NCBI RefSeq assembly: GCF_032191835.1
Contig: NC_083239.1
Location: 31,000,001 to 31,064,000, forward strand
Source of the DNA: Heteronotia binoei
Taxonomy: Eukaryota
DNA: 64,000 bases
Reading direction: 5' to 3'
How positions within the stretch are numbered: position 1 is the first letter of the stretch; each line of letters opens with the position of its first letter. Positions 13,872-64,000 of this stretch are shown piece by piece. The notes below the pieces were generated by a model. It worked only from the letters and a program-made list of their open reading frames with translations. It was not told the origin of the DNA and did not search any database. The position numbers and the translations under genes were made by a program.

Positions 13872-13896
13872 CTACTTCTAAGTAGACAGACTTAGT

Positions 13897-34194: not shown

Positions 34195-34226
34195 TAGCTC
34201 TGATTGCTAGTGAGGAAGTCTTTTAC

Positions 34227-36040: not shown

Positions 36041-36136
36041 GTTAGCAAAAATACTTCAGAGTCCAAGGCCATGCCAGAGGACATTCAATGGGGTAACAGT
36101 CCTAGCAGCTTGATGTGTGTTTTGTATGCTTTGGGG

Positions 36137-36833: not shown

Positions 36834-37058
36834 CTGAAGCAGCCCATGGATATCTTTATGTCCCATGACTGGCCCAGAGGCATCTATCATTACGGAAACA
36901 AGAACGCGCTGCTTAAGAAGAAATCCTTTTTCCGCCAAGAAGTGGAAGACAACACACTGGGAAGCCCTGCTGCATCGGAACTTCTGCACCATTTGAAGCC
37001 TGCATACTGGTTCTCAGCTCACCTTCATGTCAAATTTGCAGCCGTAATGCAACACAAG
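36834..37058 (+). CDS. DBR1: DBR1 exon 5 ([16 protein letters not shown]...[12 protein letters not shown])
   Basis: SHDWP and SAHLH metal-ligand motifs; aacag/gtacgg boundaries, 225 nt. Confidence 0.97.
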
Positions 37059-37235
37059 GTACGGGAGGGGAGAATTTGGCTGAATGGGTGTGGAGATCTG
37101 TGTGTTCGTGGAGGAGTTCCCAGATGGGTTGTGGTGGAGATAAAAATGCATTCCTGTTTTAAAAGAATAAATTGGACATTTGGCTGGAATCTCTTATAAT
37201 TGGTAACATATATGTTTCTTGTAGGATCTTGGAAC

Positions 37236-37429
37236 CAATGTTCCCTCTAAGCTGAGTTAGCATGAGCAAGCTCACAGATTTTTAGCCTCCATCTCACGCG
37301 TTTTAGTCTTAGCTCAGGAAGGATGACCCCAGAGCACAATAATTTATACAGTAGCTCACAACTTTAATGCCAGTAGCTCACAAAGTAGAATTTTTGCTCA
37401 CAAGATTCTGCAGCTTAGAGGGAACATTG
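37236..37429. mobile_element. hAT MITE, perfect 8-bp TSD cttggaac
   Basis: TIR caatgttccctctaagctg at both ends; TSD at 37228-37235 and 37430-37437. Confidence 0.85.
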
Positions 37430-38399
37430 CTTGGAACAGTGTCATTTTGACTGCCAGGCTCAGATTTCTCTTGACAATGAAATTGGTATCTTTATTGCTG
37501 ATAGCAGCCCAATCACAACTTACAGCATGAAGATTTTACAAAATCTGATTGTGGCTTAGTAGGATGGGAGAGGTCACATTGCGAGAAAGCAAAATGTATT
37601 TGGGTAAAAAATTGGATTGATTCAGTAGAGAAGCCATGGCCTTCAGTTTGGAAGACCAGATCATAGGATGTTTTGGTGATCATAGGGTTGCCATAAGTCA
37701 GAAACAATTTAGCTGCATATAACATGCACGCAAGATGGGTGACCTGCTGTGGGCTTAATTCGTACTTCTCCTCCCCCAAAGAAATAACAAGGAAGCATTA
37801 GGGGTTGGTTTGTTTTTGAAAGATGGTTTATTATTTTTATTGGAAAAATATTATTCACAGAGCATTGATCTTCTGGATTGATAAGTAGTGCTTGGTTAGT
37901 TTAAGAGCCTGCTTCGGCAGGGAGGGCAGGATATCAATCAAAGAAATAAATGTCATTTCAGTCCTCCAAGGGAACTGGTTGGCTGCTGTGAGATAGGATG
38001 CTGGACTAGATACCTCACTGGTCTGATCCAGCAGGGCTCTTTTTATGTTCTTAGATCAAGCTTAGAAGTGTACCATGGAGCAGTATGTCACATTTCTTCA
38101 TGGTGTGGCTGTAAAATAACTGGGCATTTTGCTTTTCTGTCCAAGAACTATAGTGAGCATTGATACTTTCAAATGTTCAGAGTATCTTATCTTGCTATGA
38201 TACTTAAAATATTTTTGTCAGGCTATTAGTTTTGATACCCCCAAGTTACAGAAGGTGGTAGTCAAGTGAAGAGTGGCTGTACTAAGAGCGGTTGAGTTTG
38301 TTACAGAGGCAAGATTTGAATGAAGGACAGGTTCATAGCCCAGCCTCTTAGCCCCTATGATAGACTAGCTCTTTTTTCTTTTTCTGGTATTTTGTGTGT

Positions 38400-38607
38400 G
38401 CGTGTGAGTGCATGTTTGTGCACCTGGAAGTCATAGTGACCTCTGGTGACTGACCCCTACTGGGAGTCTGGAGGATGTTCAGAGAGTTGGCTGAATAAAG
38501 CCTGCCCCCGCCTCCCACATCTGGTATTCCAAGGAGGTCTCCCATCCAAGTACTTGCCAGAGTCGACCCTGCTTAGGTTTCGAGATCTAATGGGATCAGG
38601 CTTGCCT
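38400..38607 (-). mobile_element. 5S-headed SINE variant
   Basis: ggtctcccatccaagtacttgccagagtcgaccctgcttagg is complementary to 5S; sister copy at 43925-44153. Confidence 0.65.
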
Positions 38608-38902
38608 GGGCTATCCAAGCTTTCAAAGGATTCCCCCCACCCCAATTTTTATTATTATTTAAGGCTATTTATTCTGCCTTTCCTCCATAAATCTTATATG
38701 TGATTCATCTTTATGTCATTCAGTTCTCACAATGATTCTGTGTGGGAGGTCAAGCTAAGCAAAAGTCTAGTTCAGCTACTAGACTAGATAACCCTAATTC
38801 AGCTACTACAAGCATTGATGGTTGAACTGAAAGTCCTGTAAACAAAAAAAAAGTTTAGTTTTTTAAAAAGAGAATAAAACATGGCACCCCAAAAATAATG
38901 TA

Positions 38903-39634
38903 CCGTATATACTCGAGTATAAGCCAACCCGAATATAAGCCGAGGCTTCTAATTTTACCCCCAAAATCTGGGGAAACTTATTGACTCGAGTATAAGCCGA
39001 GGGTGGGCTTATACTCGGTAGTTACTGGTAAACCTATGGAGGAGCGCCTCCAGCCCCGGGTCTCCCGCGGTCCCCTCGCCCGGCCGCACCGACCGCAACT
39101 CCCGCAACCCGGCCAGGCGCCGCTCCACTGGGCTGCACATGATCCTCCGCTCGCCGAAGCCGCCGCAGGAGCAGTTGCGGCGAGGGAGCGAGGAGGCTGC
39201 CGTCGAGGCAGAAGGAAGACGAGGAAGAAACGACGACGGCGCCCGGCCAGCCCGAGCCAGATCTGCCGCCTCCAGCACCTGAGGAGCCACTGCGAACAGG
39301 GGTCCAGCCAGGAGCGGCTGCGGCTGAGAAGGGTCGGCGGCCGGTTCCGCCGATGGTCCCCGGCAGGGAGGACCCCGCCAGCCCCCGCGGGTGGCGCCAG
39401 AGGAGCCGGGCGACGAGGAGGCGGTGACCAGAGGGCTGGAGAAGCGAGCTCGGCCATGGGGCCCTCTTCCACAGCGAGACGATGTGCGGGGGCCCCCCAG
39501 ACACCCCAGACGTGGGGCGACCCGCCCTCCCCGCCCCCCCTCCCTACACCACTGACTCGAGTATAAGCCGAGGAGGGGGTTTTTCTGCCCAAAATTTGGG
39601 CAGAAAAACTCGGCTTATACTCGAGTATATACGG
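38903..39634. mobile_element. Tc1/mariner (Tc2-like) MITE with TA TSD carrying ~500 bp of CpG-rich internal sequence
   Basis: TIR ccgtatatactcgagtataagcc at both ends, TA flanks (38901-02, 39635-36), GC/CpG-rich interior 39030-39545. Confidence 0.85.
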
Positions 39635-39827
39635 TAAATAAAAAAATGTGATTGTTCCATCTGTGCAAAATGTGATTATTCCATTGATGTGAGCTTTGAG
39701 TGGGTGTGAGGAATGAATATACAGGTATTCCACGTTGTTGCTTCCAAGTAGTGTCTCTTGTTTGTTTTATTATAATAGCCGCAATTAGCACATGTACATA
39801 TTATATGTCTTAACTCCTATTTTCTAG

Positions 39828-39908
39828 GCTGACAGCAGTGAGCAGCAGCCCAAAGCAACAAAATTTCTAGCCCTGGATAAATGCTTGCCAAAGCGAGACT
39901 TTCTTCAG
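39828..39908 (+). CDS. DBR1: DBR1 exon 6 (ADSSEQQPKATKFLALDKCLPKRDFLQ)
   Basis: tctag/gtaggc boundaries, 81 nt; TKFLALDKCLP motif. Confidence 0.97.
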
Positions 39909-40684
39909 GTAGGCCTCTCTGAAGTCTTCTATCTCGAATGTTCTCTTAATACCAACATGGCTGGCCTTGATCAAGGAAGCAGAAAATGGTCAGACAGGTC
40001 CCCTCCTTGGTTGGGACTCTTCATATATAGGGGGAAAAATGACTTCTTTAATTCATGAAAAGCAAATTGGGGAGGGAGGGAGAATTAGACAAGCCCCAGA
40101 GCAGCCTGATGAGGCCTGAATATGCTCTGAAAGGCACTGAATGTTGAGAGGAGCTTGGAGCGTCTGTTAAAGGGGGCAGTTGGTCTACGCAAGCCCCTGA
40201 GGCTTCACAGCATCTTGGGAAAGGAAGTTTTTGAAGGATAGCTGTCAAGTTGTTTCCTCTTCCGGGTGATTCCTGGCCAGGTTCTCAACTTGTTTTGATA
40301 TATATTGTCAGGCCTGAGACAGGTAGAATTGGGGGTTTTTTTAAGGCTGATATCCAAAGATGGCTGACTGTTTTTGAAGCTGGAGCCTTTGATAGGAAAA
40401 AGTAATTCTTACTAGGCCTTTGTCTGTGTTCTTGGCTTTCCTGAAGTGTATCTTAAACAGTCAGCAGGATAAATGACAGCTTGGGCTGAGTGGAGGGGGT
40501 TGTTTGTTGAGAAAGGTGCCACAGGGAGGGAAGAGATTATTCCCTCTCCCTCAACACTGTGACCCTAATCCAGTTTGTTCAGTGCCCTCCCACGCTGCTC
40601 TTTAGCAAGGAAAACCATGCTGGAGGTCCCTTCACAGATACTTCCTCTGTTTTTTTTTAAATGTAAAATTGCCACAGTCCATTG

Positions 40685-40890
40685 GAAGAAGGGCTGTGAC
40701 TCACTGGTTGAGCATCTGCTTGGCCTGCAGAAAGTCCCAGGTTCACTTCCCGGCATCTCTAGTGAAAAGGCTCAGGTAGCAGGGGATGTGAAAGACCTGT
40801 GTAAGACACTGCAAAGCTGCTGCCAGTCTGAGTAGACAATACTGACCTCGATGAACTGATGGTTTGGTTCAGTAGAAGGCAGCTTCACGA
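40685..40890 (+). mobile_element. tRNA-derived SINE (Squam2-like)
   Basis: A/B box head and gaaggcagcttca 3' end, same family as 3430. Confidence 0.7.
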
Positions 40891-41290
40891 AATTTCTTCA
40901 CGTGAAATTTAAACATCTGATTGCTTTCCATCAGAGAAATGAACAGCTTCAACTGGCTGCCATTTGTCTCTTCCCAATTTCTGATTGGATTCGCTGAGCA
41001 AATCAGTGTAGAGTTTCATCTCTGTAAGCCCATTGATTTCAAGGATCTTAAAGGGGGTGCTGAATGGCACCATTAGGTAAGCATAAACCTTTGTAGCCTG
41101 GCTTCAGATACAGAGTTTCTCAGCCTTTCCCCAAGAAAGCAGAGGGAGAAAAAGGCAAAGTGTTGTGAGAATCTGTGTCTTTCTGCTGAAAGAGGGCAGA
41201 GACAAAGCTTCCTAACTTCTGGAGTGTGTGCATGTGTTTTCATTGATTTATTTTATCACATTTATATCCCTCCCTCCCCTAATTTTAAAG

Positions 41291-41436
41291 ATTGTAGAGA
41301 TCGAGCACAATCCCAGCGCTTCTGACACCCTGGAGTATGACCCAGAATGGATTGCTGTTCTCAAAGCGACCAACAACCTCATCAGTGTGTCTCCAAACAC
41401 TTGGAATATGCCTGAAAACAATGGACTCCATGCCAG
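41291..41436 (+). CDS. DBR1: DBR1 exon 7 (IVEIEH...[14 protein letters not shown]...NNGLHAR)
   Basis: taaag/gtaggt boundaries, 146 nt. Confidence 0.96.
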
Positions 41437-41938
41437 GTAGGTAGAACAGAGGACACTTGCCAGATGTTAGAATTCCTACCTGCAAACATCTGCTTGGTTG
41501 ACATTCCAAAATTCAGCTTGACTGGATGGCCTGCTGACATCTATTGGACCAAAATTTAATTACTTCTAGAGTAATTAAACTAAAGTCCAGGGCTTCTCAA
41601 AAAAGTCTACTTCTAGAATAGAGATCCAAACCTCTGAAAAGTCTGCTCACTTTCTCTTCTTGAGCCACTCTGGTAGGGTACGTGGCAAAAGTGCCCTTGT
41701 GATGGTGGTATGCTGTGTTTAGGTGACTTACAGTGGTTTGCCTGGGGGATGGGTGTCCAAAGCCTAGCAGAACAGCACTGTTTTCTCCTGATTTAGGACA
41801 TCCCGATGCCTCTTCTGCAGGTCCTTCCCTGCTGTAGCTTACTCACACATATAGGGTTTTTGTGTTTTTTTCTGTCTTGGAGAGAAAGCTATCTTGCTTA
41901 TACCTAAGCAAGTTGTCAATTATTCAATTCCCCTAGAC

Positions 41939-42639
41939 CAGGGGTCCCCAACCCCTGGGCCGGGAACTGGTACTGGGCCGTGGCCTGTTTAGAATGGGCC
42001 GTGGCCTGTTTAGAATGGGCCGTGCAGCCTCGCCGCCTCTCTCTCCCACCCCCGTTTTCACCATTTTAAGTACAGGGAAGGGAAAGAGATAAGGGCAGCA
42101 TCACTGGCTTGCTTTCCTGCCAATCAGCGCTTCATGGGCCCTTCCCTGGCCTTAAAAATAGTGAAAACGGGAGGAGAAGGAGGCTGCACGGGGGCAAAGG
42201 AGGCAGGAGGAAACAGGGGAGGGAAATGGGAGGAGGAGGAGGCGGCGAAGCGGCGGTGCAGTAATGAGGCTGCATGGGGGGCTGACGAAGGAGGGAGGAA
42301 GAAAACGGGGGAGGAGGAGGCTGTGAGGCTGCGTGGGGCAGCAGCGAGGCTGCACAGAGGGCCAGCGAAGGAGGGAGGAGGAAAACGGGGAGGAGGCTGT
42401 GAGGCTGCGTGGAGCAGCAACAAGGCTGCGAGAGGGGCCAGCAAAGGAGGGAGGAGGAAAATGGGGAAAGAGGCTGTGTGGGGGGGGCAAAGGAGGGAGG
42501 AGGAAATGGGGGAGAGGAGGCACCGTGGGGGGGCAGGGGGAGGTTGAATTGGGTGCCCCCACCCTCCCGGCCCTGGGGCTGTGGTCGGCAGGCCGGCCCT
42601 GGTGCTGGTCCCTGGGGCGAAAAAGGTTGGGGACCACTA
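41939..42639. mobile_element. hAT-Charlie (MER1-like) MITE with perfect TSD ccctagac and an internal purine-rich minisatellite
   Basis: TIR caggggtccccaac / gttggggaccacta; TSD at 41931-41938 and 42640-42647. Confidence 0.85.
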
Positions 42640-42690
42640 CCCTAGACTCTTGGTTCATCCCACTCCAGCCTCTGCCCATATGGTATTTAG

Positions 42691-43081
42691 CAAGGATCCC
42701 CAACCATTTTGTCCTGGCAGGCACCTTTGGAAATCTGATGTAGGGTAGCGTGTGCAACCACAAAATGGCCATTGCAGGAGACGGAGCCAACCACAAAGTG
42801 TCAGGGAGTGAGATTATACACAATACTTCAGCGTTTCTGGCAGAAGCTCTGTTTAATGGGATGCTTTTGGATATGAACATATTAACAATATATCCTTGCA
42901 GGCACTCAAGTGTTCATATTGAGCTGGCTAAGAAAACTCATCTGGCAGTTATCTGCCAGATCTCCAGTGGTTAATCAGAAGCTCTGTTGGCCCTACCCAC
43001 TTTCTAAAAATGCTTGGTGGGCACCAGGAAAGCCATCAGCAGGCACCACGACTCTCACTGGCACCATGTCGGGAACCCCTG
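42691..43081. mobile_element. Older hAT MITE
   Basis: caaggatccccaac...gtcgggaacccctg termini; no clean TSD. Confidence 0.5.
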
Positions 43082-43924
43082 TGTTACGGGATACTTCTGT
43101 GTCCCTACTTTTTGTCTTTTAATTTTTTAAAATAACACAACAACAATGCATCAATGTAACATCACGCCAGAATAAATTTAATACAGAATTAAAATTGTTA
43201 TTATCTTCTGTAAATCTAAATTATTACATTAATGAGGTAAATTTAAAATAGTGACGATTAATAAAAGAATACAGGGAAATTCGGTGTCGCTACTTAGCTG
43301 CCTATATGATCCTTCTTTCCAACAAAGTGGCTAATGATACTTCAGGATTACTACTTTTGCCTTGGGCGTTGGGGTGGAAACATTAACTTGATAGCTCTGC
43401 TTTTGGATGTGACTTAAAGTGGGGGGGTGGTGCTTGGTGGGGGAGGGAAAAGCGATCTGTACTTTCCCCCAGACATTACAAATACTTGGGTGCTCTGATT
43501 AGGAGCAAAGGGGCCCCAGGAGGAGTTTGTGAGAGGGCATGGGCAAGATAAGGGCAAGAAGCAGAGCCAGGGTGACCAGACATCACAGCTGGTGATGCAA
43601 GTGGGTCGCATTTGGTGTACCCTCAGTTCCTCTCAGACCTATTTGCATGCCCAGCTAAGGAAAGATGAAGGGACTAACTAAACACTAAGGAAAGACGTGG
43701 CCAAAAAGAAACTAATGGCTGCAGTTTGTCTCTAGAACCACTGGATTGTTAAAAAAAACAAGTAACAGAGATTCTTGGTAGATTCTATACAAGAATTATT
43801 CAAAGTATATAATTTTTTAAATGCAAGTTGGCAAAGAAGTCGACCAATCCCATCCCTAGTCACCATAAGCCAGCTGCAATTTCATAATACTTTACACACA
43901 TCTATATCTTTTTGTGTGTGTATT

Positions 43925-44153
43925 TTGTATATTTTTGTGTGTGTGTTTCTACCTGGAAGTCATGTCAACCTGTGGTGATTGACTCCTATGGGGGCCTGGA
44001 GGATATTCAGAGGTGACTGAATAGAGCCTGCCCCTGTCCTCTAGACTGGGTATTTCAAGGAAGTTTTCCATCCATGTACTAAACCACAGTCAACCCTGCT
44101 TAGCTTCTGAGATCTGATGAGATTGGGCTTGCCTGGGCTATCCAGGTCAGAGC
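43925..44153 (-). mobile_element. 5S-headed SINE variant
   Basis: ccctgcttagcttctgagatctgatgagattgggc is complementary to 5S. Confidence 0.65.
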
Positions 44154-44333
44154 ACACATCTTTATCTTTTGATAAGTTCTGCCTGCTACAGATGGACAGA
44201 TGTATACTTTTATTATTACAGTTTATTTAAGTATTTATGCCCCTACTTTACTCCCCAAGGGCTCCCACTGGAATTTAGCACGTGCAAGTCTGGTTACCTG
44301 ACTTTGACTCACCTTCTTCTCGACTTCTTGCAG

Positions 44334-45000
44334 GTGGGATTACAGCGTTACAGAAGAAGATACCAAGGCAGTGCTGGACGAGGCCAACAACAACCTTCAG
44401 GTCCCCCAGAACTTCAGCGCCACGAGCTCCAACGGCAACAAATCGCAGCAGCGCGTAGCTCCAGTCCACAGAATCAATCCTCAGACCACGGAGTTCTGCG
44501 CCCGGTTTGGTCTGGTGGACATCAACAACAGAATCCAGCAAGTAAGGGAGGAGATTCTGGCACAGAGAGGGGACGAGGAAGAAGAGGAGGAGGAGGAAGA
44601 GGAGGTAGACAGTACTGGGGAAGCCAGTGACTATAATACGGATGTGTCCGGGTTGACCGCCTCCATCAACCCTGACGAGATAATACTGGATGACGAAGCC
44701 AGCGGTGAGGAAGATCCCAACGACAGCTCAGACCAGCAGTCTGATGCCACCTCCACGTATTCCGAACTCAGGAGGCTGCCGAGCAGCATGAACGTATCGT
44801 CTGATGACGGCCTGGACAGCGCGAGCGCCAACCTGGGGCAGATGAGCAGCGGTGACCAGGAGGAAGAGCAGAACACCTCCGACAAATCCCTGAAGCGGGC
44901 AGGCGATGAGGACGCAGAAGAAAAGAGTGGGAAAAAGAAAATTAAAAGACGCAACCAGGCCATCTATGCGGCACAGGAGGAGGAGGAGGAGGGGGAATGA
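44334..45000 (+). CDS. DBR1: DBR1 exon 8 (WDYSVTEED...INPQTTEFC...NPDEIILDDE...KKIKRRNQAIYAAQEEEEEGE*)
   Basis: tgcag acceptor, 667 nt to TGA; conserved NPQT..FC, NPDEI and KRRNQAIY motifs. Full CDS 1611 nt = 536 aa. Confidence 0.96.
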
Positions 45001-53072: not shown

Positions 53073-55736
53073 TCTAGAAACACACAGGAGAGGAAAAAGA
53101 GAATGGAGAAAAGTCCTTTAAGAAGGACAGTGATGTTTTCAGCAGATTCCCACTCTGCTGTTCTCATGGGTCTACTAATCTCCAAGGCCAAAATTTCGGC
53201 AGCCTCAGTCAGCTCCAGCAGGAGGGGGGAAACAGCTCCCTTTTGAGAGAACTTAATGCCTTTGGCTGGATACTGGATTGCCTCTCCCCAGAGCGTGCAG
53301 CCTATGGGCAGCTGTCAGTCTATTGCTAGATGCCATTTATGTATTTGAAAGGAAAACTGTATGTTGCCTCTTCACAGCTGTTCAAACAATAAAACAAAAC
53401 CAATGCAATAAACATGTCAATAAAAACCAGTCACACCAATAAAACAAGCCAGGTCACTTAATATAAATAGCAACAAGCAAGGGTATAAAAGCACCTAAAA
53501 CAAACAACACAGACTAGAAGAATACTGATAAAACAGGCCTTGGGCAAGGGGTAGAACATGAAACGGCGGAACCCCTTTAGATAAAAGCTTTTGTAAAAAG
53601 AAATGTTTTGATCTGGTGCCAACAGGTAGGTGCTAAGCAAGCCACAAGGAGGGTGTTCCACAGGCAAGGTGCCACCACTGAAAAGGCCTTGCCTCTGGTT
53701 GCCACTTGCCTTACCTATGCACGGAAAGGAAGGCTTGAAGAAGAAAATTTGAACTGGCGGGCTGAACAATATCGGAGGAGGAGGTTCTCTGAGCACTCCA
53801 TTTGGGGTCTCACTGGTAAGAACCAGAACTTCACAATGTAATCACAAATAAAGAGGCAGCCAACATAGAGCTTTCATCAAAAGGGTGATGTGATCCCTGT
53901 ATCTACAAACATATGCTCCATCAAGTCGTAACGAACTTCAGGCAACACCAGCAAGGGGCCTTTGAGGAAAGGGGGAAGCAGAGGTGGTTTGCATTCCCTT
54001 CCTCTGCAGAGTCTTCCTTGGTGGTCTCCCATTCAAGTAGGTTCTGAGATCTGACAAGATTGCACTATACCATGCTGCCTTTGAACTGTGTTATCTAGCC
54101 ACTGATAACAATCTGCCTGGGGGACATATTCTGGATCGACTGAAGTTTCCAAGCAGTTTTCAAAGGCACCCCCACAGAGAGTGCTTTACAATAATCTAAT
54201 CTGCGATGTGATCGGAGCATGATTTACTGCAGCCAAATCATGGGTTTTGAGGAATGGCCACAGCTACCACATCAGCTGACAAAAGACACTGCAGGGCAGG
54301 AGGGAACTTGAGCCTCCAACCACAGGCCAGGATCCATCCATCAGTTACCTAAGAGTTGCCATTAAGTGCTGTTTTTGTTAGAAAGCAACTGATTGGTCCC
54401 TCCTTATGACTGTAAAGAACAGCAGAAAAGACAAAGTCAGATAACGTAACTCTGAGGACGCGATGGGGAATGCTAAAACCAGACCATCTTTGTTATTAAC
54501 AATTGCCAGCGTAATTAGAGAGGGCTTTCATCAGCTACCCCTTCATTAAGGGCTGGCAATGAATAGAACCAGCATCCTGCCCTGGGCTGGGCTCGCCAGC
54601 AGGTTAAAAGTGGCCTGAGAATGAAATGCCGTAGTTCTGCAGGGTTCACCACAGTCCAGATCCATCAAGGCAGCAGCGTAACCTGATTTTCTTCCCTCCT
54701 CTGCAGCGTAAAAGGACAGCTTTGGAAGCTCCATACTGAAGGAAAGGAGTTTCTCTCTTGGGATCCGGTAAGACCCTCTTCCAATATTTTTTACCCCAAG
54801 GAAGCTGAGGGCTTGAACCCAAGACCTTCTGGATGCAAAAGTAGAGGCTGTCACTGAACTGTGGCACCCTCCCCATGGCGTAAGGTAATTGCTAAGAATG
54901 TATGGATATATGCCTCCCTTCAGCTAAACTGGATCCTATGACACTCTTTTGCTTATTTGGGGTAGGTAAGCTGTGTGGGGCTGTGGCAGAATAGCAATGG
55001 TCCAGTAGCACCGTTAGATATCAAGATTTCCAGGCATAAGGCATCGGGAGTCACATTTGACAAAGGGAGATTTAGCTCTCAAAAACGTAGACCCTAGAAA
55101 TCTTGTTGGTCTTTAAAGTGGGACCAGACCTCAAATCTTGCTCTTTTTTTTGCTGCGTTTGCTTCTTCCAGTAGAAAATTACTCTGGTGGAAAAAGGCTT
55201 TCTCTGGGAGAGGAAAGTCTTGTTGAAGGAAGTCTCTCCCAGTTGGGGGAAAACCTGTTGGAAGGCAGTGGTAAGATCCACCTTGGCTGCAGGGAGACAT
55301 AAAAACAAACCTTGGCTGCAAAGTGATGACTGCATACCTGAGGGTAAGCCCCCTTGAAGTACCTGGGGCAGAGTTCCAAGTAGACTCACTTGGATTGCAC
55401 TGTAATCTGCAAACTTGGAAGTCACTGGCTTGAATCTTCCATTTATCACAAAAAAGCAGATGGACTTAGGCAAGATCAGCTTTCTTAGCCCCTAACCTAC
55501 CTTCCTAGGTGGTTAGTAAGGACTGCAGCTAGATAATGTATGCAAAGCACTTGGAACACTCTCAAATGTTTTATAAAACACTGCGTCTTAACTGTGATTC
55601 AGTGTGTAAGGGAGGGAATCCAGAACTTGCTGCTCTAAATGCATCATACTGAGATTTCAACCTCAGAAGTAAATTCCAGTTGATGTTCTTTTTTCTTTTT
55701 CAGGGTACCAAACATCACCTGACACAGTCCATCACC

Positions 55737-55788
55737 ATGACAGCCTTGATCATCCATGCTGTTATTTTGCTCTTGATTTCTTCATTGG
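55737..55788 (+). CDS. Trypsin/kallikrein-like protease, first coding exon (signal peptide MTALIIHAVILLLISSL-V)
   Basis: Acceptor ttttcag at 55703, Kozak accATG, hydrophobic stretch, gtaaga donor, phase 1. Confidence 0.8.
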
Positions 55789-55844
55789 GTAAGAGTTTGT
55801 GTGATATGTAAGTGCAAATGAATGTGCCCTGGTTTCCTCTAGGC

Positions 55845-55981
55845 CAGGGGTGGGGAACAGTGGCTCTCCAGATGTTTTTTTCGCTACAACTCCCATCAGC
55901 CCTGGCCAGCATGGCCAATGGCTGGGGCTGATGGGAGTTGTAGGCAAAAACCATCTGGAGGGCCACTGTTCCCCACCCCTG
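55845..55981. mobile_element. Palindromic hAT MITE, perfect TSD ctctaggc
   Basis: caggggtggggaacag...ctgttccccacccctg; TSD at 55837-55844 and 55982-55989. Confidence 0.85.
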
Positions 55982-56602
55982 CTCTAGGCCAAGCAGCCCT
56001 CAACTTGTTGAACTCATAGGCAGTTTTGGAGTTTTATGAACAGTCAGGGAATGGTCCAACAAAATGGCTGCCATGGGAGGAAATCACAAAATGGATGCCA
56101 CAAGGGCTTAGTTCAGTCAAAAAAAGTTGATAGATTAGGCTGTTTCCGAATAGGTGTTTCCTGTTTGAGCTCTTCCTACTTCAATTATATGAAACACAGT
56201 GAGGTTTGACTCTTTATTTCCAGGAAGAGATGCTCTGGGGGAGAAAGAAGTGGGCACCAAGAAACGTATTGGTCATGGGTCCCATGGCTCCTATGGGCAC
56301 TATGTTGGGTATCACTGCTCTGGAGTTTCAGGCAGAGGTATTTTGCCAGATCCCTTTTAAGTGGAGATGTTGAGGACTGAACCTGGGACCTTTTGTGTGC
56401 CAATCAGATATTCTACCACTGAACTATGGCCCCCTCTCCTACTTCACTCACAAGAATGTGCTGAGAATAAAATGGAGCCAGTAAGAGCCATGTCTACTGC
56501 CCTGTGCTCTATAGGGTAGAATAAATTAAAGGTGTAGAGGCTTTGGTTCCTGTCATTGTAAGGTATATAAGTCTTGGTCTGAACCAGCATAGAGGGTTTC
56601 AT

Positions 56603-56695
56603 AAGAACGTAAGAGAACCCATGTTGGATCAGACCAATTGCCCATCCAGTCCAACACTCTGCATCACACAGTAGCCAAAACCCAGGTGCCATTGC
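56603..56695 (-). mobile_element. CR1 3' end fragment
   Basis: cataagaacgtaagagaacccatgttggatcag. Confidence 0.7.
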
Positions 56696-57434
56696 ATTTT
56701 CCATGCATTTTGGCTCCTGTGGTTTGAACCTGATACCCTGCCCTGTGATCCACTTGCACAGACTGAGGCTCTCTACATGCTTGCCTTCTGGAGAGGCAGG
56801 GTCAGGAGGACCATAACTTCTGGCTTCATGCACATCATATTTTATTGGCATAAATGTTGACCAGTCATTCTTTTATAAGCCAACACCTTTGTATATGAAA
56901 AAGGAGGGAAGGCTGGGGTCAGGAATATACCTCTTAAATGAAGAAAGCAGTTTGCTGAAGGGTGTTCTCTGTGGCCCACGTGGCCATCCCTGGGAATTCA
57001 TGTCTTGTTCTGGGCAAAAACCTCGTTCAACAAAGGAAGATTTTTTTTTCCATCTGAGGAATCTTTTCTCCCTCCAGAAATGGTCTTTCTCTGTTGGAGG
57101 AAGACTTAATAGAATCCTCCCCTAGAGAAAGACTTAATAAAGAATATCATAAGATCCTAATTAGTGACAGGCAGTCATAGGATCCAACCTCATACAAGTA
57201 AAATACATTTATTTGATTGAGATTCATCAGTCTGATTCATCTGAGTGTATGTCTGAAAATCAACTGAGCATGTGCTGTAAAATATATCATTCAATCACAT
57301 AAAACTCTCCAAACAAGTAAGAAACTTATTAAATGAGATAACGCCCCCCCCACACAAAATGTCACAAAATTCAAAGCCTCAGCAAACTGGACTGTCAGAA
57401 CAGCATTGTATGGAAACTCAAGAACAGTGGTCTT

Positions 57435-58000
57435 CAAGAACAAAGTCAGAGTCCAGCAGCACCTTTAAGACCAAAAAAGTTTTATTCAAGGTTTGAGCTT
57501 TCGTGTGCATGCACACTTCCTCAGCTAGAAACGGAAGATAATCATTCAAACTTATAGACTGAACAGCAAATTATCATGTAACGTGATGAAGATATAGGTA
57601 TCGTGCTTAAGAGGAGATGAATGGAGCGTCTCCATAAACTTCCCACAAATGAAAAGGATTCTCTTACCCATTTATCTCCTATTTGACATATTTATTGCTT
57701 CACTATTGTCCCCCCTTAATTAAATTCAAAACTGTGAACCCTGTATAACTTAACATGTTATTCTTATTTTGTCTCCACATATTTTAAAATATCTTCAGCA
57801 TGTTACACGCTAATTTGCTGTTCAGCCTCTGTCTAAAAGTCTGAACTATTATCTTCCATTTCTGAGTATCTGAGGAAGTACGCATGCACATGAAAACTCA
57901 TACCTTGAATAAAACGTTGCTGGTCTTAAAGGTGCCACTGGACTCTACCTTCTGTTGTGTTGCTTCAGACCAACATGGCTACCCACCTGGAGTGGTCTTA
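57435..58000. mobile_element. PLE remnant with inverted pLTR arms, each carrying a hammerhead motif (57495-57524 minus; ~57866-57903 plus)
   Basis: Minus copy CUGAGGA-A-GUGUG(CAUG)CACAC-GAAA-GCUC has an intact core and stem II, but stem I is broken. Confidence 0.75.
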
Positions 58001-58094
58001 AAGCTTCACAGTGCAGTGCTAAGCAAGCCCCCCCCCCCCCAATTTAAATTCTTTGATTTTATGAAAAATAGGGAATAGTCAATGAAGAGTCAAT

Positions 58095-58291
58095 AAGTCA
58101 CAACTGATTTATAGCAATCCCATAGGGTATTCAAGGCAAAAGATGTTCAGACATAATTTGCTATTGCCTACCTCTTCATAGCAACCCTGGATTTCTTGGG
58201 TGAACTCCCCTCCAAATACTGACCAGGGCTGAGCCTGCTGAGCTTCAGAAATCTGATGAAATTGAGCTAGCTTGGGCTATCTAGGTCAAGG
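58095..58291 (-). mobile_element. 5S-headed SINE
   Basis: Same family as 50344. Confidence 0.6.
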
Positions 58292-58511
58292 CAAATTATG
58301 CCCTTCTAGATCAGCTGAAGTCGGTTGGTTTAGAAGGGTGTAATTGTGCTTAGAATGCCAAAGAAAAACTTGTAAAACAATAATGGAAGCAGAACTCCCC
58401 ATGGAAGCAGTAAAAGCCTGTGAAAGCCATGAAAGATGATATAAAACTGGGACATGATTAAAAAGAAAGCTACAGCGTGGGGGGTAATCTCATCTCAAAG
58501 ACAGAGAAAAT

Positions 58512-58708
58512 CAGGGCTTCTTTTTGTGAGCAGGAACGCACAGGAACACAGTTCCTGCTGGCTTGGCGTCAGGGAATGTGGCCTAAAATGCAAATGAGTT
58601 CCTGCTGGGCCTTTTCTTTAAAAAAGCCCTGTGTGAAGCAATGGTGATGTTAGGGGATGTGCCCTAATGAATTCCTGGTGGGTTTTTTTCTACAAAAAAA
58701 AGGCTCTG
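58512..58708. mobile_element. hAT MITE, perfect TSD gagaaaat
   Basis: cagggcttcttttt...aaaaaaaaggctctg; TSD at 58504-58511 and 58709-58716. Confidence 0.8.
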
Positions 58709-58760
58709 GAGAAAATTAATCACTGACTCATGTTTCTACTCATAACTGGTTGCTTTTAAG

Positions 58761-58914
58761 TACTTGCCAAGAGTGGCTCGCCACCGAAGGGACACCCCTG
58801 CGTTCCCTACTCTCAGCCATGGCAAGCGGCTGTCTACAAAGCCTTCTCTTTCTACTGCGGTGCCATCCTCCTAGATCGGAAGTGGGTACTCACAGCAGCT
58901 CACTGCAAAAATGG
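58761..58914 (+). CDS. Trypsin/kallikrein-like protease exon (LAKSGSPPKGHPCVPYSQPWQAAVY...YCGAILLDRKWVLTAAHCKN-G)
   Basis: ttaag/gtaggt boundaries, 154 nt, phase 1-2; SQPWQ, CG and TAAHC (His57 at 58901). Confidence 0.93.
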
Positions 58915-60424
58915 GTAGGTGGACACAGGGAAGAATGAAGGTGAGCATGTATGCTTGTGGTTTCTCTGGGGTGGGCAGGGATGACAACATTTTATTTATT
59001 TGTTTTATTTATTTAAAATATTTTTATGCTGCCTTTAAATCCATTGTTGGGTTCCCAGGGCAACTAACTATCAAAATATTAAAAGATTTTACACACACAC
59101 TCACACACAATTAAAAACTGCAGTTAGGCAAAACACATGCACAGTTAGAACACAGACAAGAAGAAAGGTCGGTGAAGGAACAACAGGTGAAATAGATACG
59201 TTTTTATCTGATGGAGAAGACAATGACAGAGGGACAGATGGATCTTTCTGGGGGTGGAATTCCATAAGTCTGGTGTCACAGTTGGATTTTTCAAAGTGCT
59301 ACCCATCTGTCCTCAGATGGAGGGGGCACTTAAAATAGGGCTCCTCAAGATGACTGCAGAGGTTGGGTGGATTCAGATGGTTCAAATGGGATGAAATAGC
59401 TTTGATTTAAAGGGAAATAGGGAAGGGTCAATGAATAACAGGTAGGACCTAGAGTTTTCCTGGAGTTATGATTGCTCTCCAGACTAGAGATCTATTCCTC
59501 TGGAGAAAATGGAGGGTGGAAATGGAAAGAGTGATACCACATCCCCTTAGAGGTCCCTGCTCCCTCAAACCTCCAAGAATTTCCCAGGCCTAACAATTTC
59601 AGTTTTAACAATGTATATATAAGGGGAAGAGATGGAGGTGAAGGGAGGACTGAGACAAGGGTATAAATTTAATCAAATGAAGTTATTTAGGCATTCTGCC
59701 TGAAACACTTCCTCCAAGCAACTCAGGGCAGTTTTACATTGTTCTTCCTTCCTCTGAGTCATAATAAATCTGTGAGGTAGGTTGGATCGATGTCCTAAAC
59801 ATTTCCCCAAATATGTCCCTGAGCTGGATCAACAGATTTGGTGTGGGAGATCAGTGTTTTCCATGGTAGTTTGGACCCATTTCAGACTGGAACCACAGTA
59901 TGCAAAAAGAAAGGGTTTAGACCACCTCCGATACCATTTATTCAACTGGAAATGGTGCTAGAGGGATGCTATTTCCCCAGTAGGGGAACGGAATGTGTAA
60001 CTAATCAGTACAGGTTTAGTTTCTTTGGTGGGGCAAATAGCCACTTCCTTGGGGCTGTTTCAACTTGAGAAACAAATGTTGGAGGGAAGGCTTCAGTTGC
60101 ATGTCCAAGCCCCAGTCCAAATCTGGACCATGCATACTTGGAATCACAGGACTCCTTGACCATGTCTGTTGACCTGATCTGGGGATGCATCTTGGGGCAA
60201 ATGTATCCATTAATTACATGTTCCCACTGATCAGCTGGAGGGCTCTTTAAATTCCACAGGAGGGGAGGGAGAGGGGTGGCTGCTAGTGGTCACTCTTGGG
60301 GGTGGGGCTTCCCCTGCTGGCCAGCTGACTGGGGGTGGGCAGGAGCCTCCAAACAGGGGGATCCCCCACCACCAACTGGGAACTGCAAAACAAAGAAATA
60401 ATCATGTATGAATTAGCTGAGAGT

Positions 60425-60940
60425 AACTCAAAAGAATTCATTACAAAATTATTGTAGAAATTCATAAGAAATTAAAGTTTTAGAATATTAAGTCAAGCCT
60501 ATCTTTGACAAAAGCAATCTTTCTTTAACAATAAAGTGTGCCAAAATGCAATTAGTAGTCCATTAAATTATCTGTGTGCGAATAGAATCAATAGGAGAAT
60601 TTTTCTCTAAAGAATTTGTGCTTGTGATATTTGTAGACTATATTTGGAATGGTAAGAAAACACAGGACGATTGCTAACCCTTCCCTGAAGAAGGTCTCTT
60701 GAAACGAACTAATAAGCTACCAGCTCCATTGAGGTGGTGGTCAAGATGTCCTTCTACTGATTCCATTTGCACACAGATAATTTCATGGACTATTAATTGC
60801 ATTTTGGTATAAGCACTTTACTGTTAAAGAAAGATTGCTTTTGTCAAAGATAGACTTGACTTAACTAATATTGTAAAACTTTAATGAATTTCTTTGCATT
60901 TCTTCAAAAATTTTGTAACAATTTCTTTTGAATTACTTTT
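60425..60940. repeat. ~170-bp AT-rich inverted repeat (60425-60597 vs 60753-60940) around a hammerhead-like remnant
   Basis: Arms are diverged reverse complements; ctgaagaaggtctcttgaaac in the spacer. Probably a PLE relic. Confidence 0.7.
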
Positions 60941-61060
60941 ATACCAATTCCGCAATAGCAGTTGCTCTGCTCCCGGGCTTCTGCTGTCCTTAGATCAAGC
61001 GATTGATTCTCCACCTCTTTCTTCACGGCCACATTTTGACTCACGGCTCCCTCCAATTTA

Positions 61061-61520
61061 CATAAGAACATAAGAGAAGCCATGTTGGATCAGGCCAATG
61101 GCCCATCCAGTCCAACACTCTGTATCACACAGTGGCCAAAATACACACACACACACTGTGGCTAATAGCCACTGATGGACCTCTACTCCATATTTTTATC
61201 CAATCCTCTCTTGACACTGCCTATGCTTGTAGCTGCCACCACCTCCTGTGGCAGTGAATTCCACATGTTAATCACCCTTTGGGTAAAGAAGTACTTCCTT
61301 TTATCCGTTTTAACCTGACTGCTCAGCAATTTCATTGAATGCCCACGAGTTCTTGTATTGTGAGAAAGGGAGAAAAGGACTTCTTTCTCTACTTTCTAAA
61401 TCCCATGCATAATCTTGTAAACCTCTATCATGTCACCCCGCAGTCGACGTTTCTCCAAGCTAAAGAGCCCCTAGCATTTTAATCTTTCTTCATAGAGAAA
61501 GTATTCCAAACCTTTAATCA
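61061..61520 (-). mobile_element. CR1 LINE 3' fragment (ORF2 C-terminus plus tail)
   Basis: GLFSLEKRRLRGDMIEVYKIMHG...RTRGHSMKL...KYFFTQRVINMWNSLP. Confidence 0.9.
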
Positions 61521-62909
61521 TCACCCCACGTCTTCCTGATCTTTTTTTTAGAGATCAAGAAGATGCAGGGGAAACTGGAGGGAGCTGTGGGTCACAATGC
61601 AGTCACATAGCAACTGGTGGGGAATCAATCACCTGATCTAGGGAAAGCAGAAGCCTGGGGGAGGAACAGCTGTTACTGCGAAATCAATTAAATTCATACA
61701 TGGTTATTTCTTTGTTTTGCATTGCCTTGTTCCATTGTATCTCTTTGATTACTTACCCACCTGGGGACTGTCATCCCTATATCAAGTGGGGTGGGAAGTA
61801 CAGCCTGAAATAAAAGTTTTTGTAGAATTTTTAAAAAAGAGTGCTTGACGGGCTGATTTCTGAACATAGTTGCCAACCTCCATGAATTACGACTGGTCTC
61901 CAGGCTACATTTATCAGTTTCCCTAGAGAAAATGGGTGGCTTGGAGGGTAGTCTGTATGACATCAAATCCCTCCTGAGCTCCCACCCCAAACTTTGCCCA
62001 CTCTGGATTCCCCCCTCAAATCTCCAAGAAATTCCCAAGTTGTCAGCCCTGTTTTTGAGGGAAGAAAGAGAAATAGAATCCTGTAAACTTGTTAGGTGTG
62101 GTAAAAAAAAGAAAAGAAAATTCAAATGGGATAGTCAACCAAATGTCTTTTTAAATTTTGTTTGTTTTTAGAGAAGGAAATGATGGGGGGAATACTTAGT
62201 GTAGATCTAATTTTCCTATTTAATAGTTTATTATTTATCCAACATAGTCTGTAAGAGTAAGATCTATAAAATTATGGCCATGTATGGCCATAGTTATGTT
62301 TAGATTAAAATGAAGGCTTGAAATTAATATTAAAATGTCATTTTCTTTAACTGCTTATTGTATTTTTTTCTGAAATATCATTGAAATACCTTGTCTATTT
62401 CTTTTGGCTATAGTATAATTATAGCAATCATAGAATATAGTATAATCTGCAATTTCAAGTAAATCAGCTAATGCAGTCTATCAAACACTGGTTGATGCAG
62501 TCTAATTAAAATTGTGTGTGTGAGAGAAAATATTATTGAATACTGAGATTATGTTTCTATATTATATGTTCTCATACTTGAAATATTAAATATTAAAATA
62601 AATGAAAGATAAATATTAAAATATTTTAATTGTCCTTGTGTGTAAATAATATATCTAAAACCTTATTCTTGATTTTTTGTTTCCCCTTTACCCCTTTTTT
62701 CCCTTTCTGTATACCTATTTCTTTTTGAGAAAATAAAAATATATATATTAAAAAGAGAGGGAAACAAGGGGGGAAATGCTCAGTCCCAAAACTGAAACTG
62801 AACAGAACAGTGCCCCAAATCTCTATCCTCACTCTGCTCCAAGCTCTTTGATCAGAGCCAACAATCTACAGTCCAGGGCAAATTTCCACCTGCATTGCTT
62901 CCTTCGCAG

Positions 62910-63163
62910 ACTTATCCACGTCCGGCTTGGAGAAAGAAACCTGGATTGTTATGATGGGACGGAACAATATAAACATGTGATCAAAGCTATTGTTCATCCT
63001 GGATTCAATCACTCAACCCACAGCAACGATCTCATGCTGCTGAAACTGATGACCCCAGCAAGGCTGAACTGCTATGTACAGCCCTTGGGACTGTCTTCCT
63101 GGAGAGCAAGCCCTGGAAAAATGTGTTTGGTATCAGGATGGGGTGCTCCTATAAATGCTCAAA
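62910..63163 (+). CDS. Trypsin/kallikrein-like protease exon (LIHVRLGERN...HPGFNHSTHSNDLMLLKL...CLVSGWG)
   Basis: cgcag/gtatgt boundaries, 254 nt, phase 2-1, as in trypsin-family exon 3; Asp102 at 63028. Confidence 0.93.
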
Positions 63164-63227
63164 GTATGTACACTATGTTGGCTTCTCTTATATTCAGCTA
63201 TCAAAAAAAGAGGTATCCTATTTAGAA

Positions 63228-63730
63228 TAGGGTTGCCAGAGTGGGAAAATACCTGGAGATTTGGGGGGTGGAGCCTGGGGAGGGCAGGGTTTGGGGAGGA
63301 GCCTCAGCAAGATGCAATGCCATGGAGCCTGACGTTCCCCTGGGTTACAAATGACTTCCAGGCTACAAGACCCAGTCAGGTCCCTTAGATAAAATGGCAG
63401 CTTCAGAGAGCAAACTCTATGGCAGAGATGGCCAAACTTGCTTCATGTAAGAGCCATATAGAACAAACATCAGGTTTGAGAGCCGCAAGACAGGAATGCC
63501 AGATGTTTAAGAGTCGAAGGAAGGAAGACCAAATAGAGAGGGGGGAAGGAAAGGTGGAAAGAAAGCAACTTTAAATGCATTCTCCAGCTGGCTTGGATTG
63601 CTGAAGTGATTTAAAGAGACAAATGCCTTCTCCAAACTGGCTGATGGGGTGGTGGGGGCTTTGAGAACCACACAATATGTGTGAAAGAGCCACATGTGGC
63701 TCCCAAGCCTCAATTCGGCCACCCCTGCTC
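63228..63730. mobile_element. TAGGGTTGCC-family MITE interrupted by a Charlie-like MITE (~63420-63728)
   Basis: Termini match the families above. Confidence 0.6.
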
Positions 63731-63954
63731 TTTGGTATCATATCTCCAATAAGCTCCCTCCCCAGGTACTGCTCCAAATCTGCAGGAATTTCCCAAGGCA
63801 GAGTTGGCAGCCTTAATAGCAACAACACTTAGGTCTGGTTGTACTATATGTACAAAAAAATGTAGATAAAAATGGGGAAACTGCAAGTACTTGCAATGGG
63901 TCATCTCATTTCCCTCTCCTCCATTATCTGTTCTTCCCTGCCCTGAAAGTCTTC

Positions 63955-64000
63955 ATAGCATCTCCTCTTTTCTTCCTTCCTTCTCTCCTTCCCAGCCAGA
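63955..64000 (+). other. Polypyrimidine tract and acceptor of the next protease exon (probably starting at 63996)
   Basis: tctcctcttttcttccttccttctctccttcccag at the window end. Confidence 0.55.

What the first reader, a model, noticed from the sequence alone, without database searches (positions are those of the whole stretch)
55737..64000. Trypsin/kallikrein-like gene whose IVGG activation motif is replaced by PPKG
Seen: intact exons with trypsin-type intron phases encode signal peptide-KSGS-PPKGHPC. Counting back from Cys22, residues 16-19 are PPKG (58781-58792), and residue 15 is Ser rather than Arg/Lys. His57 (TAAHC) and Asp102 (NDLMLLKL) are kept and there are no stops. Established: S1 proteases are activated by cleavage before Ile/Val16, whose new N-terminus salt-bridges Asp194, and X-Pro bonds resist most proteases. 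Inference: the product may be non-activatable, cofactor-activated or a pseudoenzyme that is still under selection, and could be an undescribed squamate paralogue.
Basis: partly seen in the sequence, partly recalled or inferred. Interest (0 to 1): 0.7.

Follow-up and report, generated by a model that had tools for sequence, protein, structure and literature searches.

The report
Gecko kallikrein-15 without activation motif
This is the first three exons of an intact gecko (Heteronotia binoei) kallikrein-15-like serine protease gene which, like its counterparts in other geckos, lacertid lizards and turtles, keeps all catalytic residues but has lost the cleavage site and hydrophobic N-terminus that normally switch such enzymes on; so it probably works as an uncleaved, zymogen-like enzyme, but this is untested.

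Summary
Exons 1-3 (55737-55788, 58761-58917, 62910-63163) have kallikrein intron phases and encode signal peptide, KSGS, then PPKG at residues 16-19 (58781-58792), with Ser15, His57 and Asp102.

The window is Heteronotia binoei DNA. The gene is already annotated automatically as XP_060113972.1, "trypsin-like". Exons 4-5 lie just beyond the window. They are intact and encode Asp189, Gly193, Asp194 and Ser195.

PPKG is not an assembly error or a private mutation:
- Gekko and Sphaerodactylus genomes also read PPKG.
- Lacertids read KPKG.
- About 20 turtle species read KL(K/R)G, TLKG or QLRG.
- None has a conserved Arg/Lys15 followed by a hydrophobic residue 16.

The clade is the sister of mammalian KLK15 (SH-aLRT 92). 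It shares Glu192 plus WGDVPC only with KLK15, so it is most likely the sauropsid KLK15 orthologue and not a new squamate paralogue.

Pairwise dN/dS is 0.29-0.34 among geckos, which indicates purifying selection.

The best reading is a secreted single-chain, zymogen-like kallikrein. Human KLK10 is the nearest precedent. The mechanism is inferred only. The read tools covered only an intronic repeat, so expression is untested. AlphaFold could not discriminate between readings.

The scan had not noted this before on other DNA.

The parts
55683..55736 (+). In-frame upstream extension used by the database gene model (its CDS starts at ATG 55683). A likely splice acceptor AG lies at 55702-03, so this may be 5' UTR.
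   Evidence: L001 gene start 10001 equals window 55683. P0159 begins 18 residues before the Met at 55737. Which ATG is used was not tested.
55737..55788 (+). Coding exon 1: the hydrophobic signal peptide, ending in phase 1.
   Evidence: It is conserved in Gekko and Sphaerodactylus.
58761..58917 (+). Coding exon 2: end of the signal peptide, then KSGS-PPKG-HPC22 through to TAAHC (His57). It ends in phase 2.
   Evidence: The best matches among solved structures are KLK1, KLK8 and KLK10 (E about 1e-12). Pfam Trypsin.
58781..58792 (+). Codons for residues 16-19, reading PPKG where IVGG-type residues normally sit. Ser15 is at 58778-58780.
   Evidence: The same four residues are read in the Gekko japonicus and Sphaerodactylus townsendi genomes, with one synonymous difference (CCG/CCC).
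58901..58903 (+). His57 codon (CAC).
62910..63163 (+). Coding exon 3: the 70-80 loop, Asp102 and Cys136-SGWG. It ends in phase 1.
   Evidence: The best matches among solved structures are trypsins (E about 1e-19). Pfam Trypsin.
63028..63030 (+). Asp102 codon (GAT).
63164..64000 (+). Start of intron 3. Exons 4 and 5 lie beyond the window, at positions that would be window 65720-65856 and 71085-71237.
   Evidence: Locus L001 is identical to the window over 13,264 bases. Exon 4 is L001 20038-20174 and exon 5 is L001 25403-25555, both with canonical splice sites.

Best explanation
The region holds exons 1-3 of the Heteronotia binoei gene for XP_060113972.1. This is a five-coding-exon tissue-kallikrein-type S1 protease and most likely the sauropsid orthologue of KLK15.

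Shown here:
- The gene is complete and has the catalytic triad, Gly193, Asp194, Asp189, Gly216 and Gly226.
- The canonical activation site (Arg/Lys15 then Ile/Val/Leu16) is missing in three gecko genera (PPKG), in lacertids (KPKG) and in turtles (KL(K/R)G, TLKG, QLRG).
- The gene evolves under purifying selection.

Inferred:
- After signal-peptide removal, probably after VLA, the secreted protein starts about four residues ahead of position 16 with KSGSPPKG.
- It has no bond whose cleavage could produce an N-terminus able to insert and salt-bridge Asp194.
- It therefore remains a single-chain, zymogen-like trypsin-type protease. Its active conformation would be populated only weakly on its own and stabilised by substrate, a cofactor or an ion, as proposed for human KLK10 and for factor VIIa. 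It would not be switched on by a protease cascade.
For: Gene identity and integrity:
- P0159 is 100% identical to the window's exons, and L001 is identical to the window over 13,264 nt.
- Exons 4-5 are intact with canonical splice sites.
- Pfam Trypsin scores E 4e-65, and the match starts at profile position 3.
- The AlphaFold model has pLDDT 87.6, with Foldseek TM about 0.9 to KLK6, KLK8 and trypsin.

Conservation of the odd N-terminus:
- It is present across orthologues and was verified in the genomic DNA.
- Only 19 of 140 aligned relatives lack the K/R15 plus hydrophobic-16 pattern, and 8 of those are this clade.
- The triad, Gly193 and Asp194 are present in every full-length orthologue.

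Selection: NG86 dN/dS is 0.29-0.34 among geckos (bootstrap upper limits 0.47-0.53) and 0.08-0.25 for Heteronotia against Lacerta, Elgaria and the turtles.

Orthology:
- The target clade has support 99. It is sister to mammalian KLK15 at SH-aLRT 92, and its internal topology follows the species tree.
- Glu192 plus WGDVPC occur together only in this clade and in proteins named KLK15 (plus three unnamed database proteins), 44 of 140.
- The order DBR1, this gene, then another S1 gene is conserved in four squamates.
- Reptile KLK15 grouping with mammalian KLK15 is published (PMC8705180).

Precedent: human KLK10 has Glu16 and a disordered N-terminus that does not salt-bridge Asp194, yet it is active (PMC5551965).
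Against: - No activity, N-terminal sequence or expression data exist. The read tools returned only an intronic repeat.
- AlphaFold confidence dips in the activation-domain loops, but the echidna KLK15 control with a canonical N-terminus dips in the same places. The model therefore says nothing about a zymogen-like state.
- KLK15 orthology is favoured but not proven. The AU test does not reject grouping the clade with the main sauropsid KLK clade (p 0.42), and the chromosomal neighbour DBR1 is not a mammalian KLK neighbour.
- Signs of dispensability: the His57 exon is undetectable in Elgaria; no snake, iguanian, skink, bird or crocodilian orthologue appeared among the listed annotated proteins; and squamates lost the Cys128-Cys232 disulfide.
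Confidence: 0.55

Rival explanations
1. It is a catalytically silent pseudoprotease. Locked in a zymogen-like state, the protein would serve as a binding protein or decoy, and selection would act on its surfaces and not on catalysis.
For: - No route to canonical activation exists.
- Squamates lost the Cys128-Cys232 disulfide.
- Constraint is moderately relaxed, with dN/dS 0.3-0.48 within geckos and within turtles.
- The gene appears broken in Elgaria and was not seen in many squamate annotations.
Against: His57, Asp102, Ser195, Gly193 and Asp194 are kept in every full-length orthologue, and Asp189 in all but the sea turtles, across the turtle-squamate split. Known S1 pseudoenzymes such as haptoglobin, HGF and azurocidin have lost triad residues (background knowledge).
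Confidence: 0.2
2. It is activated by cleavage at a non-canonical position. In turtles this could be after Lys16, giving a Leu17 N-terminus one residue short. In squamates it could be an unknown processing step, and the new terminus would still engage Asp194.
For: Most turtles read S-L-K-L-(K/R)-G, with Lys before Leu. Lacertids have a basic cluster, RKK, before PKG.
Against: - Lys16 is Thr in Caretta and Gln in Carettochelys.
- In geckos the only basic residues nearby are the first mature residue and Lys18.
- Pro16-Pro17 gives no hydrophobic terminus, and X-Pro bonds resist trypsin-like cleavage (background knowledge).
Confidence: 0.12
3. It is an artefact or a dying gene: an assembly error, a private mutation, a mis-chosen exon or a young pseudogene.
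Against: - Three independent gecko assemblies encode the same PPKG.
- All five exons are open, with canonical splice sites.
- dN/dS confidence limits lie well below 1.
- An in-frame stop upstream of exon 2 excludes an extended exon, and no other S1-like exon is in the window.
Confidence: 0.03

Closest known systems
Mammalian KLK15 (kallikrein-related peptidase 15)
   Same: - Sister clade in the tree.
- Shares Glu192 (SCEGDSGG) and WGDVPC, a pair found in no other aligned kallikrein or trypsin.
- Five coding exons with phases 1-2-1-0, Asp189, about 250 residues, and about 50% identity.
   Different: Typical mammalian KLK15, and echidna KLK15-like, have Lys15 followed by Leu/Val16 (LLEG, VLEG, VLGG). 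The sauropsid proteins do not. The gecko gene sits next to DBR1 and not in a 19q13-type setting. Squamates lack Cys128-Cys232.
Human KLK10 (zymogen-like kallikrein; PMC5551965, PDB 5LPE)
   Same: - A kallikrein with a non-hydrophobic residue at position 16 and an extended N-terminus.
- The triad is intact.
- The N-terminus is disordered and makes no Asp194 salt bridge in the crystal, yet the enzyme is active.
- Exon 2 of the gecko gene aligns to it at E 1.6e-12, including the residue before Gly19.
   Different: It is not the orthologue, since the gecko gene groups with KLK15. KLK10 has Ser193 and a long 99-loop, whereas the gecko protein has Gly193 and no such insertion. KLK10 still offers Leu13 as a usable hydrophobic terminus. 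The gecko protein offers Lys-Ser-Gly-Ser-Pro-Pro.
Single-chain tissue plasminogen activator and factor VIIa (background knowledge; VIIa is also cited in PMC5551965)
   Same: These are S1 proteases whose activity does not depend strictly on N-terminal insertion. Activity comes from an internal surrogate or from a cofactor.
   Different: tPA uses Lys156 to pair with Asp194. The gecko protein and all sauropsid orthologues have Tyr156 (alignment A1). Both tPA and VIIa keep a cleavable activation site.
Engineered trypsinogens K15A and delta-Ile16-Val17 (PDB 1F7Z, 1FY8)
   Same: These trypsin-fold proteins cannot insert an N-terminus, yet they adopt the active conformation when a tight ligand binds. 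They appear among the structural neighbours of the model.
   Different: They are laboratory constructs with very low free activity, not natural genes under selection.

Membership tests
Peptidase family S1 (chymotrypsin fold, Pfam PF00089) | Sequence match to the family profile | tested here: met
   Exons 2 and 3 score E 3e-11 and 4e-17. The whole protein P0159:19-267 scores E 4e-65.
Peptidase family S1 (chymotrypsin fold, Pfam PF00089) | Catalytic triad His57, Asp102, Ser195 and oxyanion-hole Gly193 | tested here: met
   TAAHC and NDLML lie in the window. GDSGGP, preceded by SCE, lies in exons 4-5.
Peptidase family S1 (chymotrypsin fold, Pfam PF00089) | Two-barrel fold | tested here: met
   The AlphaFold model has pLDDT 87.6 and pTM 0.88. 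Foldseek gives TM 0.90-0.92 to KLK6, KLK8 and trypsin.
Peptidase family S1 (chymotrypsin fold, Pfam PF00089) | Zymogen activation by cleavage after Arg/Lys15, exposing Ile/Val/Leu16 | tested here: not met
   Residues 15-19 read S-P-P-K-G. This feature is typical of the family but does not define it.
Tissue kallikreins (KLK), specifically KLK15 | Five coding exons with intron phases 1-2-1-0 | tested here: met
Tissue kallikreins (KLK), specifically KLK15 | Phylogenetic placement with KLK15 | tested here: inconclusive
   It is sister to mammalian KLK15 at SH-aLRT 92. The AU test does not reject an alternative placement (p 0.42). Published trees place reptile KLK15 with mammalian KLK15 (PMC8705180).
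Tissue kallikreins (KLK), specifically KLK15 | KLK15 signature residues Glu192 and WGDVPC | tested here: met
   The two occur together in 44 of 140 aligned proteins: 7 of this clade, the proteins named kallikrein-15, and 3 unnamed ones.
Tissue kallikreins (KLK), specifically KLK15 | Position in the KLK gene cluster | tested here: inconclusive
   Another S1 gene follows on the minus strand, but the upstream neighbour is DBR1. Wider synteny is not visible with 10-kb flanks.
KLK10-type zymogen-like kallikreins | Non-hydrophobic residue 16 with an intact triad | tested here: met
KLK10-type zymogen-like kallikreins | Orthology to KLK10, Ser193 and a long 99-loop | tested here: not met
   The protein has Gly193 and no 99-loop insertion, and it groups with KLK15.
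KLK10-type zymogen-like kallikreins | Disordered N-terminus with no Asp194 salt bridge, yet enzymatically active | not testable with these tools
   This needs protein chemistry or a crystal structure. AlphaFold confidence did not discriminate.
Snake-venom-type serine proteases (SVSP/SVL) | C-terminal extension with an extra Cys paired to Cys91 | tested here: not met
   The protein ends ...KKTILEN with no extension, and it has no Cys at position 91. It belongs to the KLK4-15 side and not to the KLK1/SVL side described in PMC8705180. No SVL sequences were included in my tree.

The most novel reading that the evidence does not exclude
Sauropsid KLK15 may be a naturally cleavage-independent S1 protease. 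It would have dispensed with zymogen activation for more than 250 million years and would reach the active conformation by an as yet unknown intramolecular or cofactor-based substitute for the Ile16-Asp194 salt bridge. One example would be the basic residue 18, which is conserved throughout the clade. If so, it would be a natural counterpart of engineered 'activation without proteolysis' trypsinogens.
Probability: 0.15. Interest if true: 0.7.

Novelty: new variant of a known kind. Interest (0 to 1): 0.45.

Why it matters
Insertion of the new N-terminus is the near-universal switch of chymotrypsin-fold proteases, and kallikreins act in activation cascades built on it. Here a kallikrein orthologue group keeps every catalytic residue under purifying selection from turtles to geckos, yet has no conserved cleavage site and no hydrophobic residue 16.

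- It is a natural experiment on how far the fold can work, or be regulated, without that switch.
- It gives a second, independent case beside human KLK10.
- It removes KLK15 from any proteolytic cascade in these animals.
- It shows that 'trypsin-like' and 'kallikrein-15-like' labels in reptile annotations hide a functionally atypical protein.

Tried and rejected
- **Read evidence.** The look-up of sequencing runs found only six runs, each holding 5% of the sampled words. Laying four of them showed cover almost only on an intronic high-copy repeat at 60965-61568 and nothing usable on the exons. Neither expression, nor splice joints, nor PPKG in raw reads could be checked.
- **Word search with exon 3 alone.** It found nothing, because of the tool's length window. 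This is why the large representative search was used.
- **AlphaFold as a test of a zymogen-like state.** The gecko model has low pLDDT at the N-terminus, the 145-150 loop, 185-193 and 218-226, which together are the classical activation domain. The echidna KLK15 control with a canonical N-terminus shows the same dips, so I rejected this as evidence.
- **A tPA-like Lys156 surrogate.** Residue 156 is Tyr in the whole clade, so I rejected it.
- **Basic residue 18 as a special novelty.** Lys or Arg at 18 is common in KLK11 and KLK15 (IIKG, VLKG), so this is weak.
- **KLK10 orthology.** It was suggested by the PDB hit and rejected by the tree.
- **A paralogue in the window with IVGG.** None was found.
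- **AU test to exclude a reptile-specific origin.** It was not decisive (p 0.42).
- **Joined translation.** A joined (spliced) translation of the window's exons was never sent to any search. Exons were searched one by one by reference. From then on I used the database protein P0159, which a tool had returned. The dN/dS counts were made exon by exon, leaving out the split codons.


Full report
**Observation**

The stretch 55737-64000 holds three exons on the plus strand.
- Exon 1 (55737-55788) encodes MTALIIHAVILLLISSL and ends in phase 1.
- Exon 2 (58761-58917) follows an AG acceptor. It encodes (V)LAKSGSPPKGHPC...TAAHCKNG and ends in phase 2.
- Exon 3 (62910-63163) encodes LIHVRLGE...NDLMLLKL...CLVSGWGAPINAQ and ends in phase 1.

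The His57 codon is 58901-03 and the Asp102 codon is 63028-30. An in-frame stop two codons upstream of exon 2 prevents any longer exon, and the window holds no other S1-like exon. Both exons match Pfam Trypsin. Among solved structures, exon 2 is closest to KLK1, KLK8 and KLK10, and exon 3 is closest to trypsins.

**Identity of the gene**

A word search with exon 3 alone found nothing because of the tool's length limits. The representative search with exon 3 led to a turtle protein, P0007. Word searches with P0007 and then with its gecko relative returned P0159, XP_060113972.1, 'trypsin-like [Heteronotia binoei]'. P0159 is identical to the window's three exons.

Its locus L001 (GCA_032191835.1, CM063341.1) is identical to the window over all 13,264 shared bases. 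An earlier scan note had called this a gecko genome, and this agrees.

Exon 4 (L001 20038-20174) and exon 5 (L001 25403-25555) lie 1.7 and 7.1 kb beyond the window's end. Both have canonical splice sites, and together the exons show the kallikrein phase pattern 1-2-1-0. They encode Asp189, Cys191, Glu192, Gly193, Asp194, Ser195, Gly216 and Gly226. The catalytic machinery and a trypsin-type S1 pocket are therefore complete.

**Is PPKG real and conserved?**

The genomes of Gekko japonicus (L002) and Sphaerodactylus townsendi (L003) encode the same S/T-P-P-K-G-H-P-C. The only difference within the four codons is synonymous.

Other orthologues read as follows:
- Lacertids (Lacerta agilis and three Podarcis species): R-K-K-P-K-G-Y-P-C.
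- About twenty turtle species: S-L-K-L-(K/R)-G.
- Caretta: S-L-T-L-K-G.
- Carettochelys: S-M-Q-L-R-G.

None has a conserved Arg/Lys15 followed by a hydrophobic residue 16. In a 140-sequence alignment of kallikreins and trypsins, only 19 lack that pattern. Eight of them are this clade and most of the rest are mammalian KLK15 models. An assembly error or a private mutation is excluded.

**Orthology**

A maximum-likelihood tree of 76 proteins gives these results:
- It recovers the gecko-lacertid-anguid-turtle group with support 99.
- The group's internal branching follows the species tree.
- It places the group as sister to mammalian KLK15 (echidna, marsupials, placentals), with SH-aLRT 92.

Glu192 together with WGDVPC occurs in 44 of 140 aligned proteins. 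These are members of this clade, proteins named kallikrein-15, and three unnamed database proteins, and nothing else. Barua et al. (PMC8705180) also report that reptile KLK15 groups with mammalian KLK15.

The AU test does not reject an alternative grouping with the main sauropsid KLK clade (p 0.42). I therefore rate KLK15 orthology as likely, not proven.

The local gene order DBR1, then this gene, then another S1 gene on the opposite strand is shared by Heteronotia, Sphaerodactylus, Lacerta and Elgaria. That settles orthology within squamates. DBR1 is not a KLK neighbour in mammals (background knowledge).

**Selection**

Exon-by-exon Nei-Gojobori counts, with split codons left out, give the following:
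- dN/dS 0.31, 0.34 and 0.29 for the three gecko pairs, with bootstrap upper limits of 0.47-0.53.
- 0.20 for Heteronotia against Lacerta.
- 0.08-0.14 for Heteronotia against turtles, where dS is saturated, so these are rough.
- 0.31-0.48 among turtles.

This is purifying selection of ordinary to moderate strength for a kallikrein, and it is not neutral decay.

There are also signs that the gene can be dispensed with:
- In Elgaria the His57 exon cannot be found by tblastn or blastn.
- Squamates have lost both Cys128 and Cys232.
- No snake, iguanian, skink, bird or crocodilian protein joined the clade in the listed hits. That is weak negative evidence.

**Mechanism**

Shown: the enzyme core is intact, the canonical activation bond is absent, and the gene is conserved.

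Inferred:
- The signal peptide is probably cut after VLA (the -3/-1 rule; no predictor was run).
- That cut would leave KSGSPPKG-HPC22.
- Pro16-Pro17 gives neither a cleavable bond nor a hydrophobic free amino terminus. The Ile16-Asp194 salt bridge, which orders the activation domain (Huber and Bode; background knowledge), cannot form in the usual way.

The retention of Asp194, Gly193 and the triad for the whole history of the clade argues that catalysis still matters. The best-supported model is therefore a single-chain, zymogen-like protease whose active state is selected or induced by substrate, ion or partner. This is what Debela et al. concluded for human KLK10, which has Glu16 and a disordered N-terminus that makes no salt bridge, yet is active (PMC5551965).

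I put about 0.55 on this overall reading. That combines identity and conservation at about 0.85-0.9 with the mechanism at about 0.5. The rivals and my confidence in each are:
- A true pseudoenzyme: 0.2.
- A non-canonical cleavage: 0.12. It is conceivable in turtles after Lys16, but that Lys is not conserved.
- An artefact or a dying gene: 0.03.

**What did not help**

The sequencing-run tools returned only runs that share an intronic high-copy repeat, so expression and read-level support remain untested.

AlphaFold models the fold well (pLDDT 87.6), and Foldseek confirms a kallikrein/trypsin fold. The low-confidence loops coincide with the classical activation domain, but they are just as low in the echidna KLK15 control with a canonical N-terminus. 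The model cannot speak to the zymogen-like state. No tPA-type Lys156 is present; the residue is Tyr.

**Novelty and verdict**

The gene is already annotated, though only automatically, and a reptile KLK15 clade is published. I found no paper noting that this clade lacks the activation site.

It is a new variant of a known kind: a kallikrein, probably KLK15, that lost the canonical switch long ago and is still maintained. It is of moderate interest to protease biochemists and directly testable with recombinant protein. It is not related to the venom (SVL/SVSP) branch, since it has no C-terminal Cys extension and no Cys91.

Noticed in passing
alignment A2 (proteins P0185, P0191, P0275, P0281, P0288, P0300, P0310, P0312): Several mammalian proteins named kallikrein-15 also lack Arg/Lys15 plus a hydrophobic residue 16. 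They include naked mole-rat, guinea pig, hedgehog, three bats and tree shrew. The KLK15 N-terminus may be unusually labile across amniotes, or these may be gene-model artefacts.
   Followed up: no
L005 (Elgaria multicarinata) 10001-15600: The orthologue's exon 2, which carries His57, cannot be detected between exon 1 and exon 3. The database model splices exon 1, read in another frame, straight to exon 3. The gene is probably broken in this anguid.
   Followed up: partly
alignment A1; window 63094-63096 and L001 exon 5: All squamate orthologues have lost both partners of the Cys128-Cys232 disulfide (Arg at 128; Ser, Phe or Met at 232), while turtles keep them. Geckos and Elgaria carry a new Cys in LNCY (about residue 116), and Heteronotia alone adds one in LDCYDG (about residue 75).
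   Followed up: partly
window 60965-61568 (intron 2): A very high-copy interspersed repeat. It is the only part of the stretch covered deeply in all four public runs that were laid, including metatranscriptomic libraries from other organisms.
   Followed up: no
window 30161-44997, plus strand: The lariat debranching enzyme gene DBR1 (Metallophos at 30161-30382, DBR1 C-terminal domain at 44371-44997). It is the conserved upstream neighbour of the protease gene in four squamates.
   Followed up: partly
window 19138-19470, minus strand: An exon of a class II cytokine receptor (Pfam Tissue_fac, E 8.5e-10). From the human 3q22 gene order it may be IL20RB; that gene order is from memory and was not tested.
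   Followed up: no
window 55683-55736: The database model starts translation 18 codons upstream of the Met at 55737 and reads through an apparent splice acceptor (AG at 55702-03). The upstream stretch is similar in Sphaerodactylus and Lacerta models. Which start codon is used affects whether the hydrophobic segment acts as a normal signal peptide.
   Followed up: no
L001 27524-35555, minus strand (beyond the window): A second S1 protease gene (248 residues) lies tail-to-tail about 2 kb downstream. The same arrangement is seen in Sphaerodactylus, Lacerta and Elgaria.
   Followed up: no
sea-turtle orthologues (P0007, P0337-P0340, P0346, P0347): Sea turtles have Asn where other orthologues have Asp189 (GGTNSCEGD), which suggests a changed S1 specificity in that family.
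   Followed up: no
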